Shown in pieces: positions 7,912-14,425 of a DNA stretch of 64,000 nt. Where the stretch lies: positions 62,001 to 126,000 of IMG/VR virus record IMGVR_UViG_3300037245_001419; one strand, written 5' to 3'. The first letter of the stretch is position 1, and each line of letters begins with the position of its first letter. The translations under genes and the position numbers were made by a program. Under the pieces are notes generated by a model that had not been told where the DNA came from, ran no database searches, and was given only the letters and a program-made list of their open reading frames with translations.

Positions 7912-9126
7912 TTAAAATATATTAACTAAACGCTCAATATATTGTCGAGATTCGAGGTAACGACCTTCATTCTCCATTTTTTCATACTGCAGTCTTCGAA
8001 TTCTGTTAAAGTTCTTAGGCTCTGAGTACTTTTTAATCATGGAGTCGATATCTTCGACTGTACAATCTTCCGGCATTGTAAGAAAATTATGGTCATATGG
8101 GGATGATGAACCATCTGTAAATGTACTTCCGATAGCTAATACACCATCTGCTGAATGTTCGAGGAACTTTAGATCGCTCTTTGCACTGTTAAATTGATTT
8201 CTTACGAGAGGCATGATACCAAAGTCTGCTTTTTCGCTTTTAACTAGGTTTGGATACTGGTAAGAATTTACCCATCCATGTACCTTGATCTTATCTTTAA
8301 TCTCATCCATGAACCACGGGAGGCCACCAAACACGGTAAAATCTATTTCATCATTATTGACTGATTTAATTACCCAATCTTTCCATGCGTTATCCCAGTC
8401 CCCAAGTCTCTTTTCACCATTATGATAATGAGTAGGAGAGCCTGTGTAGATGACTTTAGGTTTTTTAATGACTTCAGTTATGTCAGATTTTCTTTCGTGT
8501 CCCCAGAAGTACTGAGGGACGCAGTTGGGTATAACCTGGATCTTTGTCTTAATGCCGAGTTCTTTCTCATAATAATTTTTTAGAAATGGTGTGGAAACGG
8601 TAACAAGATCCATGAGCTTCATGATTTCAACTGATGCTGTTTTAATTTCTTTGGTGATGCCTTTACTGCCGAAGTTGTATGATGGTACGCCTTCATCAGT
8701 AGTACCGCCTTGGTTTTCGTTGAACCCATGGATGTGATCGTCCATCTCCCATATCATTTTATATTTGAACTTAGGTTGATTCTCTTTGTACTGCTTTATA
8801 ACTGTAAGATGATCGGGGGTCATTTGACGTTGGAAAAAAATTGAGCGTGTTCTTGAAAGTATATCGTTTTGATATACGAACGATGGGGCAAGTAGCATGC
8901 TCATCCGACCAGACTTACCAAATACCGAGTTGAGATAAGTCATCCAGAAGATGTTTCTAATATGCCCACAACCGCTAGAATCGCTTAGGAATGATAAAAC
9001 TAAATTCTTTTTTACTTTAACAACACCTGGTGGAAGTTCTTCACTTGCTGTTGTTGGTGGGGTAGCTATTGTAGCTGCTTGTAGTTGCTTTTGAAACTCG
9101 TCTAGGTTGCTGGTTTTTTTACTCAT
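7912..9126 (-). CDS. glycosyltransferase (GT-B fold, GT4-like)
   Basis: DSSGCGHIR, WEMDD, TVSTPFL, VIPN and PLVRNQFNSAKSDLKFLE...SPY motifs typical of phage GT-B enzymes. Confidence 0.8.
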   Translation of the reverse strand: MSKKTSNLDEFQKQLQAATIATPPTTASEELPPGVVKVKKNLVLSFLSDSSGCGHIRNIFWMTYLNSVFGKSGRMSMLLAPSFVYQNDILSRTRSIFFQRQMTPDHLTVIKQYKENQPKFKYKMIWEMDDHIHGFNENQGGTTDEGVPSYNFGSKGITKEIKTASVEIMKLMDLVTVSTPFLKNYYEKELGIKTKIQVIPNCVPQYFWGHERKSDITEVIKKPKVIYTGSPTHYHNGEKRLGDWDNAWKDWVIKSVNNDEIDFTVFGGLPWFMDEIKDKIKVHGWVNSYQYPNLVKSEKADFGIMPLVRNQFNSAKSDLKFLEHSADGVLAIGSTFTDGSSSPYDHNFLTMPEDCTVEDIDSMIKKYSEPKNFNRIRRLQYEKMENEGRYLESRQYIERLVNIF

Positions 9127-10178
9127 AAACAGATGTCCTTCTCATTGTGTAAGTTGCTATATACATTTTCTATGTTTTCATACACATCTTTCTTGCCTAC
9201 CATTTTGATCTCATCGAGGTATTCATCAATAAGCTCTAAGAGGTCAACGGCTTTATAGTCTTCACTAGTTCCTTGTATGTTAGACTTTCGATCGATTGTA
9301 ATAGGGAGAATGGCAGGTTTGAATCCTTCGCAAGTATCAATATACTTTTCAATTTCTTCTTCACTAAACTCTTGATCATAGTTGACTTCGAGTTTTATTA
9401 CGTTCCCTCTTATATCTTTCTTGTATAAGGGTTCAGGATAAACTACTGTTTTAAACTTTAAAGATGTATTGTTATTTATAAATTCGTAATCAAGGGTATC
9501 TAGATCGAGAATACAGAACCCTCGTTCATCACCTTCGTCAGAAAACGTAAGTTGGTATGGATTGCCGATATATTCTATCTTACGTTCTGCTCGCTGCATA
9601 TTACTTCTGGTGTGGAAGTGACCTGAAAATACTAAGTTATAATTATTAAATAGTATCTCTGTGTCCAACCCGTGCTCATTGACTCTTTTATTATTAAGCT
9701 TAAAACCCATAATTGGTAGATGACCAAGCATAACATCACAGAAGATATTATTGTTCGCTATACGGTTCTTGAATTGATCTTCGTCACACTGCCATGGGAC
9801 AAGTAATACCTTACGGTTAGCGATAGATAGGAGTTTAATATCTTCAATTACATCGACGTTAGGATACTTGTCTAAAAACTTAAGTGAATGTGTCTCAATA
9901 TTGTTCTTAAAGTATGAGTCATGGTTCCCGATTAACATAGTGATCTTAAAATCTTTTAGTTCGTTATCAAACAACTCCATGATAATGTTCTTCAATCTAA
10001 TGTTGATAGTAGATCTGTTGTCCCAGAAATCACCCAAATGAAATATACGAGTAATGTTATGTTTCTTTAGATAAGGAACAAATTCTTTTTTGAAGAACTT
10101 TAGTTGGGACTTTAAAAATACATCTGAGTTGCCATGAACTCCAAAGTGTGTATCTGTTATTAGTGCTACTTTAGCCAT
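9123..10178 (-). CDS. gp47: Mre11/SbcD-like recombination nuclease subunit
   Basis: TDTHFG, HLGDFWDNR, IGNHD, SGHFH and GNPYQLTFSD motifs. Confidence 0.95.
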   Translation of the reverse strand: MAKVALITDTHFGVHGNSDVFLKSQLKFFKKEFVPYLKKHNITRIFHLGDFWDNRSTINIRLKNIIMELFDNELKDFKITMLIGNHDSYFKNNIETHSLKFLDKYPNVDVIEDIKLLSIANRKVLLVPWQCDEDQFKNRIANNNIFCDVMLGHLPIMGFKLNNKRVNEHGLDTEILFNNYNLVFSGHFHTRSNMQRAERKIEYIGNPYQLTFSDEGDERGFCILDLDTLDYEFINNNTSLKFKTVVYPEPLYKKDIRGNVIKLEVNYDQEFSEEEIEKYIDTCEGFKPAILPITIDRKSNIQGTSEDYKAVDLLELIDEYLDEIKMVGKKDVYENIENVYSNLHNEKDICL

Positions 10179-10180
10179 GA

Positions 10181-10399
10181 CTACTCCTGTAGTATAAATT
10201 TTCTTATAGTTTCTTCAACCGTCTTTGGGGTAATTACTTCAGTTCCCCATGCTTCATAAGATTGAGTAAGATTTAGGATTATTTTATTATCTTTCCATAA
10301 GGTTAAACCCATGGAGATATTGCAGCATGTACATCCTGGGTTAACCTTATAGGCATACTTGATGTCTTCAACAACTATATCTCGATATTTCTTTTTCAT
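10181..10399 (-). CDS. hypothetical protein
   Basis: 72 aa, overlapping stop/start with its neighbours in the operon. Confidence 0.6.
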   Translation of the reverse strand: MKKKYRDIVVEDIKYAYKVNPGCTCCNISMGLTLWKDNKIILNLTQSYEAWGTEVITPKTVEETIRKFILQE

Positions 10400-10728
10400 C
10401 TTTTTTTCCTCAAAAAGAACATGCAGTACTTAGCAACGACCTCTGACTTACTACGTGAGTGGTTAATGGCATCGCCATATGATACGATCTCACTCATCTT
10501 CTTTAGTTCGCGTTTAGAAGGGGATATCATGGCAATACCTTTCTTACTGTTTTTATATTCAATCCAAGATTCGCACATAGGATTATCACAAATTGTATAG
10601 AAATTTTCAACCGTACTGATATCAATTACTTCTAATAAACAATCTCCATCTTTAGATTGAAATTCATGAATGTCGGTTTCACATACCGGACACTTAGATT
10701 TGTAAGTCACATAGTCATACATTCCCAT
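10396..10728 (-). CDS. Zn-finger-like hypothetical protein with shared C-terminal motif
   Basis: MGMYDYV..CPVC...CDNPMC; C-terminus DAINHSRSKSEVVAKYCMFFLRKKR. Confidence 0.7.
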   Translation of the reverse strand: MGMYDYVTYKSKCPVCETDIHEFQSKDGDCLLEVIDISTVENFYTICDNPMCESWIEYKNSKKGIAMISPSKRELKKMSEIVSYGDAINHSRSKSEVVAKYCMFFLRKKR

Positions 10729-10729
10729 A

Positions 10730-11155
10730 TTATCTTTCCTTTTTAAGATAGTTCCAGCAAAACTCGCTTATGTTTTTGCTTTTGTTTCTAACATTTAATA
10801 TTGCTACTGAGTTAGTAGTAATAAATCTCTTCGCTATAAAGTTTGCCCATCTTCCTTCGGGTCTGTTATCAAAATTGATATCATTGAAGTCACTGAAGTA
10901 TCTTGCATTTCTAATTCGATCACTCATTCTTTTAGATAAGTCATCAGCCTCAAAGTGTATCTTATTTTCAGATTCAAATGATTTGTTATAAGTACATACA
11001 AATCCACAATCTGTACATTCGTGGTGGCTAATATAGTGTGAATGCAGCGGTCTTCCTCTCATTGATGATATAGATTCTATTTTATATCTAATCTTCTTTT
11101 TGCAATATATACATGCAGAGCTTACGGTGTGTTTGGATTTATTTACTACTAGCAT
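10730..11155 (-). CDS. Zn-finger-like hypothetical protein with shared C-terminal motif
   Basis: CIYC...CTDC; C-terminus VAILNVRNKSKNISEFCWNYLKKER. Confidence 0.7.
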   Translation of the reverse strand: MLVVNKSKHTVSSACIYCKKKIRYKIESISSMRGRPLHSHYISHHECTDCGFVCTYNKSFESENKIHFEADDLSKRMSDRIRNARYFSDFNDINFDNRPEGRWANFIAKRFITTNSVAILNVRNKSKNISEFCWNYLKKER

Positions 11156-11158
11156 ACC

Positions 11159-11287
11159 TTATTCTATTTTAACGTGAGAAAATAACCATATAATTATTTC
11201 TACAATTTTCCATATGCCGAACGGTACGAAGCATAGGCACACGAAAAACATTTTTATCAATCCGCTGATTGCATATTCTAAATACAT
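11159..11287 (-). CDS. 42-aa membrane peptide (not in the ORF track)
   Basis: AGGAG RBS then MYLEYAISGLIKMFFVCLCFVPFGIWKIVEIIIWLFSHVKIE*; fills the gap between its neighbours. Confidence 0.7.
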   Translation of the reverse strand: MYLEYAISGLIKMFFVCLCFVPFGIWKIVEIIIWLFSHVKIE

Positions 11288-11751
11288 TTTCTCTCCTTGT
11301 CACTCTTGAGGAAGGCCCAACAATAATCACGGACTTTTTTAGACTCGTGTTTAGAGTGGAGTAGCGCATCTGCATTAGATATGATTAATTTATTCAATAA
11401 AAAATCTGTCCATATTGCATAATGACCTTTGTCAAGATTGTGTTTATGATAGAAGGTAAGTGTTTTGCCTTCATCTATAGATGTTATAACTTGATTGGTG
11501 TAGTGTGAAGTTACGTACATGCCATATTCATTTTCTATGTACGACAAGTCAAGTTCAATAATGAAATGACAAAGGGGGCATGGTTGTTGAATATGGAACT
11601 CTACATGATGATGCTCTGGATTTTGTTCTACGCCAGGTCGTCTTTCTACATCACTGGTTTTTTCGCAGTACGGACAATTGAGGTATAACATACTTGAGTT
11701 AAGTATCATTACGCCTCCTGGCTTCAACGAATATGTTTTAAAATCTTCCAT
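11278..11751 (-). CDS. Zn-finger-like hypothetical protein with shared C-terminal motif
   Basis: CPYC...CPLC; C-terminus DALLHSKHESKKVRDYCWAFLKSDKERK. Confidence 0.7.
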   Translation of the reverse strand: MEDFKTYSLKPGGVMILNSSMLYLNCPYCEKTSDVERRPGVEQNPEHHHVEFHIQQPCPLCHFIIELDLSYIENEYGMYVTSHYTNQVITSIDEGKTLTFYHKHNLDKGHYAIWTDFLLNKLIISNADALLHSKHESKKVRDYCWAFLKSDKERKCI

Positions 11752-11852
11752 TATTTCAATAGTTCCATTATATCTTCAAACAACAAACGGTATCCTGGGT
11801 ATGTAAGACCCAGGAGTAGTGCCGTAAGAATGAATAGCAAGCACCTAATCAT
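11751..11852 (-). CDS. 33-aa hydrophobic peptide (not in the ORF track)
   Basis: MIRCLLFILTALLLGLTYPGYRLLFEDIMELLK*; ATGA overlap with the gp55 stop and TAATG overlap with the next start. Confidence 0.6.
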   Translation of the reverse strand: MIRCLLFILTALLLGLTYPGYRLLFEDIMELLK

Positions 11853-12403
11853 TCCCAGTCGTCCAACATTATAATGTTATCAGATCTGTCAAGGTTCTCT
11901 ATGTAGAACAGTGATGTAAAAGTGCTCATATTCTTGTTGTTCTTATTAATGTTCTGTAAGAATGCATTAAAGGCTATCTGAGTGAAGTATGCGAAAGGGT
12001 TGCTTCTGTCTGTATCATATCTGTCAATGTAAATGCACATGAAGTATACTCCATCACTGACCATTGTATCTTTTCTGAGTGGGTCATAATTAATGAAGTT
12101 GGGTTTCTTCAGAATACCATCACAGATAAGTAGAAAAAATCTACCTAGCTTATTTTTAAGTATGTCGAGTTTCTTAATTCTCATATCTTGCTGTTCAGGT
12201 GTCTCATCTGCAACTAATTTGATTCGTCTTTTGTGAAGTTTTTTTCTTCTTTCAAGAAATTTCTTCTGCGTATCGTCTTTAGCTTTCTTTTTACTGAACC
12301 AGTCGGTGGTATCATAGTTAAGAATTTGATATTCTTTTAGCATTTCTAGGAAGGTTGCATTATCTATGTATCCTTTTTTAGGTTGTTTTTTCTCTTTAGC
12401 CAT
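11849..12403 (-). CDS. gp55: late-transcription sigma factor
   Basis: YIDNATFL, KKPNFINY, DTMVSDG and SNPFAYFTQIAFNAFL motifs. Confidence 0.93.
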   Translation of the reverse strand: MAKEKKQPKKGYIDNATFLEMLKEYQILNYDTTDWFSKKKAKDDTQKKFLERRKKLHKRRIKLVADETPEQQDMRIKKLDILKNKLGRFFLLICDGILKKPNFINYDPLRKDTMVSDGVYFMCIYIDRYDTDRSNPFAYFTQIAFNAFLQNINKNNKNMSTFTSLFYIENLDRSDNIIMLDDWE

Positions 12404-12418
12404 ATAGCTCCCAGGAAA

Positions 12419-14167
12419 TTAAATGTCAGTTCTCACAGTGGAGAAGCCATTCTCTTTCTCTATTCTCAATTTTTTAGCAAACAAGTCTTTACTATGGAGT
12501 CTGTGTGAAATCACATAGATGCATAAGCTCGGATTGCTGTATATCAGATTCTGTAAAGATTCTAATATTTTTTGTAGTCCATCATTATCTGTAGAAGAGT
12601 CCAGGACTTCATCAAGGAATAAAATGTTACATCTCCAATTTGCTATATCTTTCATGATCTGGATAAAGCTAAACATAATACTAAGGTCTATTCTCTTCTG
12701 CTCACCTGCACTAAATGACATGTAGCTGATAGGTTTACGATTAATCATGTTCTCGATGCTCTCTACCATCATATCATCAAACTTAAGTGATACGGGCAAG
12801 GCAAACAGATTAATGTACTCATTGATCTTAGCGTTTAAATTTGGGAGGAACTTTTTGTATAGATATGATTTTATTCCATTGTCAGATAGTACTTCTATCG
12901 ATTTTGTATTTATTTCAATTTTCTTTAACAGGTCTGTATTTATTTCTTTCAGGTTATCTCTTTCTTGCTCTTTTAAACTGAAGTCTTTTCGGAAGGATTC
13001 GATATCTGTGTCAAATTTATCTTTTCCAATGGTTTTATATCGATCCTGGGCAGACTTTAGTTTTTCTGTATTATGCTTTAGATCAGAATCAATCTGAAGC
13101 AAACGGGTCTCTATCTTTCGTTTCTTGTTTTCTTTATCGGTTTCAGTGTTTATATCGGATGATAATTTAACGATAAGGGTTTTTAGTATCTCAATCTCAC
13201 ATCCAAAAGTGATGTTATTAACTTCAAACTCTTCTTTATGTTTGAGTTTATGGTCTTCATCTATCTCTGACTGACAGTGAGGGCAGGTGCTATTATCATC
13301 AAGTAGCGCAATGTCCCTATTGTTTTTATTAATAGAGTTTTGATATTCTGAAATCTTTGCTGATGCTTTAGCTTTATCGTTTATCAGGGTGTCTTTTCCG
13401 GCCAGGATAAGGGTGCTCAGAAGCTCTTCTCCTTTATTCCGACCATTGGTACAGTTAAGTATTTGCGCTTCACACAGGTCTATCTCTGCCTGAATTTCCT
13501 TTAGGTTGCGCTCTTGATTCTTATCGAAGTTCTCTTCTAGAGTTTCAAGCTGATGAATATACTTCTTGGTGCTTTCAATACCGGACTCAGCTGAGAGAAA
13601 AGAAGATTTGTTTAGCTTATGATCAACCTCTACACCTTTTTGCCTGTTCTTAATTTCGGCCAAAATCTTGGAGACGATGCCGATCTGGAATATGTTTTCT
13701 ACCAAATCCCGTTTTTTGTTTTTAGGTAGGATAAGAAAGGGTTCATTATAATTTATTGCTAAACAAATTACTTCTTTGAATAAAGCGAAGTCAATGCCCA
13801 GGATATTATCTATCTCGATCTGTGTCTTGGCAGTGGAAGGTAATTCATCTTGCTCAACCGTGTTCTTATAAACTTTTAAGACTTTGGGTTTAAGTCCTCT
13901 GACGATACGATACTCATCACCGTTAGCTACAAATGTGACTTCAGTAAGTAGATTCTTCTTATTTTTACGGTTGATTAGCTCATCGAGTTTAATTTTACGA
14001 TAAGTTTGACCGAACAAACAAAAGGACAGGGCATCAAGTATTGAACTCTTACCTTGCCCATTCATACCGACAATCTGATTCAACCCTGAGGTAAAATCTA
14101 TAACGGTCTCATTCTTCCCATAACTGAGAATATTCTTAAACTTCAAATTTAGAAAATCTACAAACAT
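12419..14167 (-). CDS. gp46: Rad50/SbcC-like recombination ATPase subunit
   Basis: Walker A GMNGQGKS, coiled coil with CPHC zinc hook, signature FSAGE and Walker B/D-loop LDEVLDS. ATG at 14167 (MFVDF) preferred over the upstream TTG at 14215. Confidence 0.95.
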   Translation of the reverse strand: MFVDFLNLKFKNILSYGKNETVIDFTSGLNQIVGMNGQGKSSILDALSFCLFGQTYRKIKLDELINRKNKKNLLTEVTFVANGDEYRIVRGLKPKVLKVYKNTVEQDELPSTAKTQIEIDNILGIDFALFKEVICLAINYNEPFLILPKNKKRDLVENIFQIGIVSKILAEIKNRQKGVEVDHKLNKSSFLSAESGIESTKKYIHQLETLEENFDKNQERNLKEIQAEIDLCEAQILNCTNGRNKGEELLSTLILAGKDTLINDKAKASAKISEYQNSINKNNRDIALLDDNSTCPHCQSEIDEDHKLKHKEEFEVNNITFGCEIEILKTLIVKLSSDINTETDKENKKRKIETRLLQIDSDLKHNTEKLKSAQDRYKTIGKDKFDTDIESFRKDFSLKEQERDNLKEINTDLLKKIEINTKSIEVLSDNGIKSYLYKKFLPNLNAKINEYINLFALPVSLKFDDMMVESIENMINRKPISYMSFSAGEQKRIDLSIMFSFIQIMKDIANWRCNILFLDEVLDSSTDNDGLQKILESLQNLIYSNPSLCIYVISHRLHSKDLFAKKLRIEKENGFSTVRTDI

Positions 14168-14425
14168 AACACTCACAACTTTGATTTCTGATTTAACGAT
14201 TGCTGCTATTTCCAAGACTCGTCCGAATGTTGATTTACCGAATCCAAGCTCTTCGCTCAGATTGATTCAACTAGTGAACACGACACCAATAGTCTGTCCT
14301 TGAAGAAATCTTGTGAAACTAAAGTCGCTCCTCTAAAGTCATATTGTCGTTTTCTACTTGCGCAAAAAAGATATGGTCAGTTTTGGATATGAACAGTAGC
14401 ACCACAAGTGCTTAATCATTTATTA

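What the first reader, a model, noticed from the sequence alone, without database searches (positions are those of the whole stretch)
10396..11751. Three divergent Zn-finger proteins carrying the same C-terminal tag between gp55 and gp47
Three ORFs have different N-terminal two-Cys-pair domains (CPYC/CPLC, CIYC/CTDC, CPVC/CDNPMC) but end in one alignable motif: DALLHSKHESKKVRDYCWAFLK, VAILNVRNKSKNISEFCWNYLK and DAINHSRSKSEVVAKYCMFFLR. The first two also share the preceding W..F[IL]..[RK][FL]I..N. DNA similarity is low, so the motif is old and kept at protein level. Inference: a modular family of variable recognition heads on a common docking or oligomerisation helix. These could be early host-takeover or anti-defence effectors that bind one shared partner.
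Basis: partly seen in the sequence, partly recalled or inferred. Interest (0 to 1): 0.62.

Follow-up and report, generated by a model that had tools for sequence, protein, structure and literature searches.

The report
Expanded phage family with shared helical core
The three small zinc-ribbon proteins between gp55 and gp47 do share a conserved end piece, and it marks an undescribed family with at least 15 copies in this uncultured T4-like marine-sediment phage; what the family does is still unknown.

Summary
Three minus-strand ORFs (A 11278-11751, B 10730-11155, C 10396-10728) lie between a gp55-like late sigma factor and gp47. Each has two Cys knuckles, and all three end in one alignable motif.

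The similarity is significant by BLASTP and by shuffling. It is held at protein level: third codon positions are at random identity.

Three details of the finding need correcting:
- A and B are whole-length paralogues, not different heads.
- The "tag" is the ~33-45-aa, three-helix core of a larger family. A profile of the tails finds 12 more copies in this 212-kb phage and about 50 metagenomic relatives.
- The core lies within 8 residues of the C-terminus in only 19 of 66 members.

Modularity is partly supported. The N-terminal parts of 65 members fall into 43 clusters with no detectable similarity between them. C's zinc ribbon also occurs alone as 73-90-aa phage proteins. Four relatives carry a piece resembling the L7/L12 C-terminal domain.

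In a syntenic sister phage the trio is only 30-44% identical, against 61-78% for the flanking core genes. The tail is the best-kept part.

Pfam, PHROGs, PDB sequences, fold searches and GenBank phages gave no match. The only lead is a profile-profile resemblance to one DUF4116 alpha-solenoid repeat. A shared-partner docking role is plausible but untested.

The parts
11278..11751 (-). Gene A (P0001): 157 aa as the longest ORF, probably 143 aa from the ATG at 11709. Zn-ribbon head plus family core at the C-terminus.
   Evidence: ORF list. AGGAGG lies 5 nt before the ATG at 11709. The same gene is called on 6 other contigs. The family profile hits it at E 1.3e-11.
11569..11676 (-). Two Cys knuckles of A (CPYC ... 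CPLC, residues 26-61), a putative 4-Cys zinc ribbon.
   Evidence: Sequence. Both knuckles are kept in the orthologue in L017. They align with the knuckles of B.
11296..11394 (-). Family core of A (residues 120-152), the conserved tail.
   Evidence: Profile alignment. AlphaFold2 helices at 112-122, 126-131 and 138-153, with pLDDT 84-92.
11159..11287 (-). 42-aa hydrophobic ORF between A and B. It sits inside the cluster but is not a family member.
   Evidence: GGAGAG lies before its ATG. A 60-aa counterpart holds the same position in sister phage L017, at 38% identity.
10730..11155 (-). Gene B (P0002, 141 aa), a whole-length paralogue of A.
   Evidence: BLASTP A-B 2e-13 over 129 columns. N-terminal halves alone: 3 of 2000 shuffles reach the score. 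Family profile E 6.5e-9.
11006..11113 (-). Two Cys knuckles of B (CIYC ... CTDC, residues 15-50).
   Evidence: Sequence. Both are kept in the L017 orthologue.
10733..10831 (-). Family core of B (residues 109-141), ending at the C-terminus.
10396..10728 (-). Gene C (P0003, 110 aa): a separate zinc-ribbon domain fused to the family core. Its ATG lies one base after B's stop codon.
   Evidence: Orthologues are P0061 (43% identity, syntenic) and P0058 (33%).
10573..10692 (-). Cys knuckles of C (CPVC ... C-x4-C, residues 13-52). They belong to a head domain that also exists alone.
   Evidence: Seven head-only proteins of 73-90 aa (P0067-P0073) are 39-48% identical over about half of the query and lack the tail.
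10399..10503 (-). Family core of C (residues 76-110), ending at the C-terminus.
10181..10399 (-). 72-aa ORF (P0004) between C and gp47. Not a family member.
   Evidence: No significant profile hit (E 3.4). Absent from the syntenic locus L017.
11849..12403 (-). gp55-like late sigma factor (upstream flank).
   Evidence: phrog_234 at 4.5e-24.
9123..10178 (-). gp47, SbcD-like nuclease subunit (downstream flank).
   Evidence: phrog_100 at 2.6e-76. tblastn hits to gp47 of T4-like phages.

Best explanation
A, B and C belong to a previously undescribed multigene family of small accessory proteins. The family is specific to a lineage of uncultured T4-like phages from marine sediment.

Shown:
- The family is defined by a core of about 33-45 aa, predicted as helix, short helix, loop, helix. 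Its signature is an invariant Ala followed by L/I-L, a basic residue five positions later, then I/V, L/F-Cys and K-L-K.
- This phage has 15 copies. All are outside late-promoter contexts. They sit in variable slots among replication genes or in two arrays of small ORFs.
- A and B are tandem paralogues with the same zinc ribbon. C is a fusion of the core with a different zinc-ribbon domain that also exists alone.
- The genes evolve about twice as fast as their neighbours, while the core is held.

Inferred:
- The core is a constant structural and interaction module, possibly a solitary DUF4116-like alpha-solenoid hairpin. It would dock on a common partner of the host or of the phage replication and expression machinery.
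- The fast-changing heads would give each paralogue its own target or specificity.
- That would make the family a set of non-late host-takeover or counter-defence adaptors.

The partner and the activity are unknown.
For: Family and copy number:
- Tail profile and iteration on the own genome.
- 15 hits with the 66-sequence profile.
- 65 proteins at E<=1e-3 among 1.84 billion representatives, about 50 of them foreign.

Core conservation: Ala in 62 of 62, I/V 88%, R/K 83%.

Structure: the core helices are modelled at pLDDT 84-96 in two models.

Modularity:
- N-terminal parts fall into 43 clusters.
- C's head occurs alone in phage-like contigs.
- Four relatives carry L7/L12-CTD-like additions.

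Selection: in sister phage L017 the trio is 30-44% identical against 61-78% for gp46, gp55, gp47 and the glycosyltransferase. The tails are the best-kept stretch.

Timing: TATAAATA is absent within 120 nt upstream of all 15 genes, while it clusters in the structural module.

DUF4116 lead:
- hhalign of the core against the repeats of P0029 gives probability 76%, E 2.3e-5 and score 22.7. The column-shuffle null has mean 5.3 and maximum 11.
- The helical half of A gives only weak matches to alpha-solenoid and TPR chains.
Against: - No partner is known.
- The complex prediction for B+C gave no answer.
- Fold searches gave nothing above noise (Z<=5.1).
- The models are only moderate overall (mean pLDDT 67-69) and rest on a 15-sequence alignment.
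- The profile aligns about 90-100 positions in most paralogues. The core could therefore be just the best-kept part of one fast-evolving domain rather than a separable module.
- The DUF4116 link rests on the repeats of one protein. Pfam's own model hits only 1 of 66 members, at 0.0083.
- Non-late timing is inferred from a T4-type promoter motif, not measured.
Confidence: 0.45

Rival explanations
1. One fast-evolving single-domain family with no real modularity. The C-terminal helices are the folding nucleus and so the only part that stays recognisable. The heads are the same domain diverged beyond detection, apart from the zinc-ribbon additions.
For: The 66-sequence profile aligns over about 90-100 positions in most own-genome members. 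AlphaFold2 places the N-terminal strands and a strand after the core together with the helices. A and B are alike over their full length.
Against: C's head is an independent domain found without the core. A, B and C have zinc knuckles that no other member has. Head lengths range from 11 to 119 aa and fall into 43 clusters. Some members carry additions after the core.
Confidence: 0.3
2. Small nucleic-acid-binding regulators. The zinc ribbon together with a helix-turn-helix-like basic core would bind DNA or RNA, and the paralogues would recognise different sites.
For: Basic positions in the core are conserved (R/K 83%, K/R 72% and 88%). Zinc ribbons are common in nucleic-acid binders. The genes sit among replication and transcription genes.
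Against: No helix-turn-helix family or fold was matched. The median net charge of the core is only +2, and whole-protein pI ranges from 4.2 to 10. The loop between helices 2 and 3 is longer than a classical turn. Most members lack a zinc ribbon.
Confidence: 0.15
3. The shared tail is an oligomerisation element that lets the paralogues form homo- or hetero-oligomers, for example B with C.
For: B and C are translationally coupled here (stop, one base, ATG). Their orthologues overlap in L017. All members share the same helices.
Against: There is no direct support. Promiscuous hetero-oligomerisation among 15 paralogues encoded at dispersed loci is hard to reconcile with separate functions.
Confidence: 0.07
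4. The tail is a sorting signal, for capsid packaging or injection, carried by different cargo proteins, like the capsid-targeting sequence of the T4 internal proteins.
For: A common short motif on otherwise different small proteins.
Against: The T4 signal is N-terminal and cleaved (own knowledge). No late promoter motif precedes any of the 15 genes. The motif is internal in most members.
Confidence: 0.03

Closest known systems
DUF4116 repeat (Pfam PF13475), modelled as an alpha-solenoid (PMC8078820)
   Same: The pattern and spacing match over 29 columns: N-x-x-A-L, then a hydrophobic residue 11 positions on, then L plus a small residue. hhalign gives probability 76% and E 2.3e-5, well above the column-shuffle null. 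A DUF4116 protein (P0029) was itself pulled in by the family profile.
   Different: The phage core is a single copy, not a tandem array. Pfam's model reaches only 1 of 66 members, at E 0.0083, and none of A, B or C. The conserved Cys and the K-L-K end are not DUF4116 features. DUF4116 itself has no known function.
Free-standing phage zinc-ribbon proteins P0067-P0073 (73-90 aa, no curated family)
   Same: They have the same head as C, at 39-48% identity. Both knuckles and the conserved stretches between them are kept.
   Different: They lack the family core. Pfam and PHROGs give only sub-threshold generic zinc-ribbon hits.
Small ORFs of the T4 variable region between genes 55 and 47 (a-gt.2 to a-gt.5, 47.1, mobB)
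   Same: They occupy the same kind of slot: small, unexplained, non-late ORFs between conserved replication and transcription genes.
   Different: There is no sequence relation. The family profile finds nothing in T4 bases 1-42000 in six frames. The gene order also differs: here it is 46-55-trio-47.
Virus multigene families with a constant docking module and variable parts, such as poxvirus ankyrin/F-box proteins or the T4 internal proteins with their common targeting sequence (own knowledge)
   Same: The logic proposed here is the same: many paralogues, one conserved short module, variable remainder, fast evolution.
   Different: There is no sequence or fold relation. A docking function is not shown here.

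Membership tests
DUF4116 (PF13475) | Match to the Pfam model at or above its gathering score (24.9 bits) | tested here: not met
   A, B and C give no hit at E<=1. Among 66 family members one hits, at E 0.0083.
DUF4116 (PF13475) | Tandem repeats of the unit | tested here: not met
   Each phage protein has one core (domain tables). P0029 has about 9 units with a 22-residue spacing.
DUF4116 (PF13475) | Profile-profile similarity of the unit | tested here: inconclusive
   hhalign probability 76%, E 2.3e-5, score 22.7, against a shuffle maximum of 11.0. The template profile comes from one protein only.
4-Cys zinc ribbon (generic) | Two Cys knuckles about 25-35 residues apart, conserved in orthologues | tested here: met
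   All eight Cys of A and B and all four of C are kept in L017 and P0058. Metal binding itself was not testable.
Curated zinc-ribbon families of Pfam (zf-Di19, Zn_ribbon_Top1 and others) | Score at or above the gathering cut-off | tested here: not met
   The best is 15 bits against a cut-off of 27.5.
Helix-turn-helix DNA-binding domains | Match to a helix-turn-helix family or fold | tested here: not met
   No Pfam helix-turn-helix hit in 66 members. No helix-turn-helix chain appears among the structural matches. The models are of moderate quality, so this is not excluded.
T4 RpbA (considered for the paralogue upstream of gp45) | Sequence similarity to RpbA | tested here: not met
   No Pfam hit. 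The family profile does not hit the rpbA ORF in T4 locus L015.
NUMOD-type DNA-binding modules of free-standing homing endonucleases | Match to a Pfam NUMOD model, or an adjacent nuclease domain | tested here: not met
   No such hit at E<=0.1 or 0.01. A, B and C contain no nuclease motif.
T4 internal-protein capsid-targeting sequence | N-terminal cleaved signal and late expression | tested here: not met
   The motif is C-terminal or internal. No late promoter motif lies upstream.

The most novel reading that the evidence does not exclude
The core is a universal docking module. Through it this phage lineage would deliver 15 or more different heads (zinc ribbons, beta-rich parts, L7/L12-like pieces) to one hub of the host or of its own replication, transcription or translation machinery. 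That would be an expandable adaptor toolkit analogous to the ankyrin/F-box families of large eukaryotic viruses, and it has not been described for T4-like phages.
Probability: 0.15. Interest if true: 0.75.

Novelty: new variant of a known kind. Interest (0 to 1): 0.45.

Why it matters
T4-like phages carry many small non-late genes of unknown function. Several of those that have been solved turned out to be host-takeover or counter-defence factors.

This family has features that make it easier to study than a typical orphan ORF:
- It has 15 copies in one genome.
- It has a sharply conserved core and fast-changing heads.
- It has no hit in Pfam, PHROGs, PDB or any cultured phage searched.
- One profile finds all members, and the conserved core offers a common bait for partner searches.
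- Natural fusions (a free-standing zinc ribbon, an L7/L12-like piece) hint at partners.

If a common partner exists, it would point to a vulnerable hub in the still unknown marine-sediment host. If none exists, the family remains one more lineage-specific expansion of small phage genes.

Tried and rejected
Searches that found nothing:
- Pfam and PHROGs scans of A, B, C and P0004, of all 15 paralogues, and (Pfam only) of 66 family members gave nothing at or above a cut-off.
- tblastn of A, B, C, P0022 and P0061 against 50,697 GenBank phage records found nothing. Megablast of the locus found nothing either. The only hits were weak ones to the zinc knuckle of Gordonia and Vibrio phages.
- Word-indexed search of 5.8 billion proteins with the family alignment and with A+B+C returned only this phage's own proteins.
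- A pattern scan of IMG/VR with A alone found nothing.
- A PDB sequence search with the family profile gave a best E of 0.68.
- Fold searches gave no significant match: Foldseek against PDB and BFVD, VIA-align wide on both models, and the ESM Atlas by shape and by features.

Ideas tested and dropped:
- RpbA for the paralogue upstream of gp45, and any relation to T4 ORFs in bases 1-42000.
- A DNA-level repeat under the tails.
- sigma-70-type promoter and terminator scans of the locus: counts were at shuffle level and gave no information.

Other:
- Complex prediction for B with C returned "no answer" (score 0.00). This is not evidence for or against binding.
- Sequencing-run search found only two marine-sediment DNA runs, which may be the source, and no RNA run.
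- No genetic code other than table 11 was used.

Full report
**Setting.** The window is bases 62001-126000 of a 211,777-bp IMG/VR virus record with a CheckV completeness of 93%. The runs that hold this DNA are marine sediment metagenomes.

It is a deeply divergent T4-like phage. gp47 is at most about 34% identical to any GenBank phage. The locus has no nucleotide match there.

On the minus strand the gene order is:
- gp46 (SbcC-like)
- gp55-like late sigma factor
- A
- a 42-aa hydrophobic ORF
- B
- C
- a 72-aa ORF
- gp47 (SbcD-like)
- a glycosyltransferase

T4 also has a variable stretch of small ORFs between genes 55 and 47, in a different gene order.

**The observation.**
- A (11278-11751), B (10730-11155) and C (10396-10728) exist as described, with the quoted Cys knuckles and tails.
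- Independent gene calls on other contigs of the same phage agree.
- The tail similarity is not chance. BLASTP gives 1e-5 for A-C and 1e-3 for B-C over the last 30 residues.
- In 2000 shuffles the real score was reached 0, 0 and 8 times for A-B, A-C and B-C.
- The similarity is held at protein level. Nucleotide identity in the tail is 40-53%, and third codon positions are 27-37% identical.
- There is no DNA repeat under the tails.

Two corrections apply:
- A and B match over their whole length (2e-13). They still match when the tails are removed (3 of 2000 shuffles). They are tandem paralogues with the same zinc ribbon. Only C has a different head.
- A most likely starts at the ATG at 11709, which follows AGGAGG. 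That makes it 143 aa, close to B's 141.

**The tail is the core of a much larger family.**
- A profile of the three tails, run on all 2830 stop-to-stop ORFs of the phage, found two more ORFs at 4.8e-7 and 2.2e-5. Four more were borderline, with the motif in the same place.
- Iteration converged on nine ORFs.
- By eye, and then with a 66-sequence profile, the count is 15, with a possible sixteenth.

Besides the trio, the members lie at these sites:
- Immediately upstream of the gp45 clamp gene.
- Between the putative primase and RNase H genes; these two are named from their size, position and sequence by eye, with no family scan.
- In one array of four at 144.4-147.9 kb.
- In a run of five adjacent genes at 152.4-154.0 kb, with one more at 156.2 kb.

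None has the T4-type late promoter motif within 120 nt upstream. That motif clusters in the structural module.

**Relatives elsewhere.**
- The exhaustive profile search of 1.84 billion representatives gave 65 proteins at E<=1e-3, about 50 of them not from this phage. They are 55-237 aa long.
- All share the core: Ala in 62 of 62, L/I-L after it, R/K in 83%, I/V in 88%, L/F then Cys (68%), and K-L-K.
- No cultured phage has the family at tblastn sensitivity.
- T4 bases 1-42000 have no hit.
- Pfam, PHROGs and PDB sequences have nothing.

**Is it a tag, a helix or a domain?**
- AlphaFold2, with the 15 paralogues as alignment, gives moderate models: mean pLDDT 68.6 for A and 66.8 for paralogue F (P0005).
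- The core is confident, at pLDDT 84-96. It is predicted as a helix, a short helix, a six-residue loop and a long helix.
- In 47 of 66 members more than 8 residues follow the core. The median is 15 and the maximum 150. Often this is a short strand with a conserved F-P.
- A strict C-terminal position is therefore a peculiarity of A, B, C and a few others.

**Modularity.** Three results support it:
- The parts N-terminal to the core (11-119 aa) fall into 43 BLAST clusters among 65 members. Cys knuckles occur only in the A, B and C types.
- C's head is a domain of its own. Seven proteins of 73-90 aa are 39-48% identical to it and have no core. One of them lies on a phage-like contig with PhoH, an RNA ligase and a methyltransferase.
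- Four relatives carry, after the core, a piece that matches part of the L7/L12 C-terminal domain. It scores 19-24 bits, just under Pfam's cut-off of 25.9.

Against strict modularity, the 66-sequence profile aligns about 90-100 positions in most paralogues. Part of the head may therefore be one diverged domain.

**Selection.**
- A sister phage has the same arrangement: gp46, gp55, A', a small membrane ORF, B', C', gp47. It is locus L017, from a 104-kb IMG/VR contig.
- Its core genes are 61-78% identical to the window's. A, B and C are only 39, 30 and 44% identical.
- All Cys knuckles are kept, and the tails are the best-preserved stretch.
- That 42%-complete contig holds five family members. 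A third phage fragment holds one.
- The trio is thus conserved as a unit, evolves fast, and is constrained mainly in the core.

**What the core resembles.**
- Fold searches gave nothing significant: Foldseek against PDB and BFVD, VIA-align wide, and the ESM Atlas.
- The helical half of A gives only weak matches to alpha-solenoid and TPR chains, with Z up to 5.1.
- One lead came from the big search. The 438-aa protein P0029, matched in four stretches, is a DUF4116 repeat protein (Pfam 3.3e-20).
- hhalign of the 33-column core against its repeats gives probability 76%, E 2.3e-5 and score 22.7 over 29 columns. In 200 column shuffles the mean was 5.3 and the maximum 11.
- DUF4116 has been modelled as an alpha-solenoid (PMC8078820). 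It has no known function.
- The core may therefore be a solitary DUF4116-like hairpin. Membership is not established, because Pfam's model hits 1 of 66 members at 0.0083.

**Mechanism.** The following is shown: a multigene family, a conserved helical core, variable and partly independent heads, fast evolution with a constrained core, and a non-late genomic context.

The following is inferred. The core is a constant interaction or scaffold module, and the heads give specificity. That would make the family a set of accessory adaptors for host takeover or counter-defence. I put this at 0.45.

The rivals are:
- One fast-evolving domain without real modularity (0.3).
- Nucleic-acid-binding regulators (0.15). 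This is weakened by the modest core charge, the pI range of 4.2-10 and the absence of any helix-turn-helix match.
- An oligomerisation element (0.07).
- A packaging signal (0.03).

The single complex prediction (B with C) returned no answer and counts neither way.

**Verdict.**
- The family is new to the curated libraries and to cultured phages. It belongs to a familiar kind, the lineage-specific expansions of small phage accessory genes.
- Interest is moderate.

Noticed in passing
window 11159-11287 (-): A 42-aa hydrophobic ORF between A and B has a GGAGAG ribosome-binding site. A 60-aa counterpart (38% identity) holds the same position in sister phage L017 (6395-6577). It is probably a real small membrane protein gene.
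   Followed up: partly
window 11751-11852 (-): A 33-aa hydrophobic ORF has a start codon that overlaps the gp55 stop (ATGA). It ends where the longest reading of A begins.
   Followed up: no
window 9123-14215 (-): The gene order 46-55-small ORFs-47-glycosyltransferase differs from T4, where the order is 55, a-gt.x, mobB, a-gt, 47.1, 47, 46.x, 46. Here the late sigma gene sits between the two nuclease subunit genes.
   Followed up: partly
window 10181-10399 (-): A 72-aa ORF (P0004) overlaps C's stop codon by ATGA. It is absent from the syntenic locus of the sister phage and has no family match.
   Followed up: partly
L004 4357-6018 (+) = genome 152357-154018; L006 2358-5918 (-) = genome 144358-147918: Family paralogues lie outside the window in two arrays. 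One is five adjacent genes, some overlapping. The other is four genes, three of which share an N-terminal M-A-K/N-L-D-x-R-K start.
   Followed up: partly
L005 2613-2918 (-) = genome 52613-52918: A family member lies directly upstream of the gp45 clamp gene. That is the position of rpbA in T4, but it shows no similarity to RpbA.
   Followed up: yes
L007 3168-3593 (-) = genome 59168-59593: A 141-aa ORF with a GIY-YIG-looking N-terminus lies next to a family member, between the putative primase and RNase H genes. It may be a free-standing homing endonuclease.
   Followed up: no
proteins P0043, P0049, P0055, P0059 (metagenomic relatives): In these the family domain is followed by a piece matching positions 5-43 of the L7/L12 C-terminal domain model. 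Scores are 19-24 bits, just under the cut-off. This is a possible hint at a link to translation.
   Followed up: partly
proteins P0067-P0073; L019 5001-5243: The head of C exists as a free-standing 73-90-aa zinc-ribbon protein family with no curated name. At least one copy lies on a phage-like contig.
   Followed up: partly
genome 40089-40706 (-), outside the window: A 205-aa ORF is a possible sixteenth family member, hit at E 0.011 with the 66-sequence profile.
   Followed up: no
L017 (IMGVR_UViG_3300043172_001415): The sister phage contig is labelled 'provirus' by IMG/VR, although the part read is a T4-like replication module.
   Followed up: no
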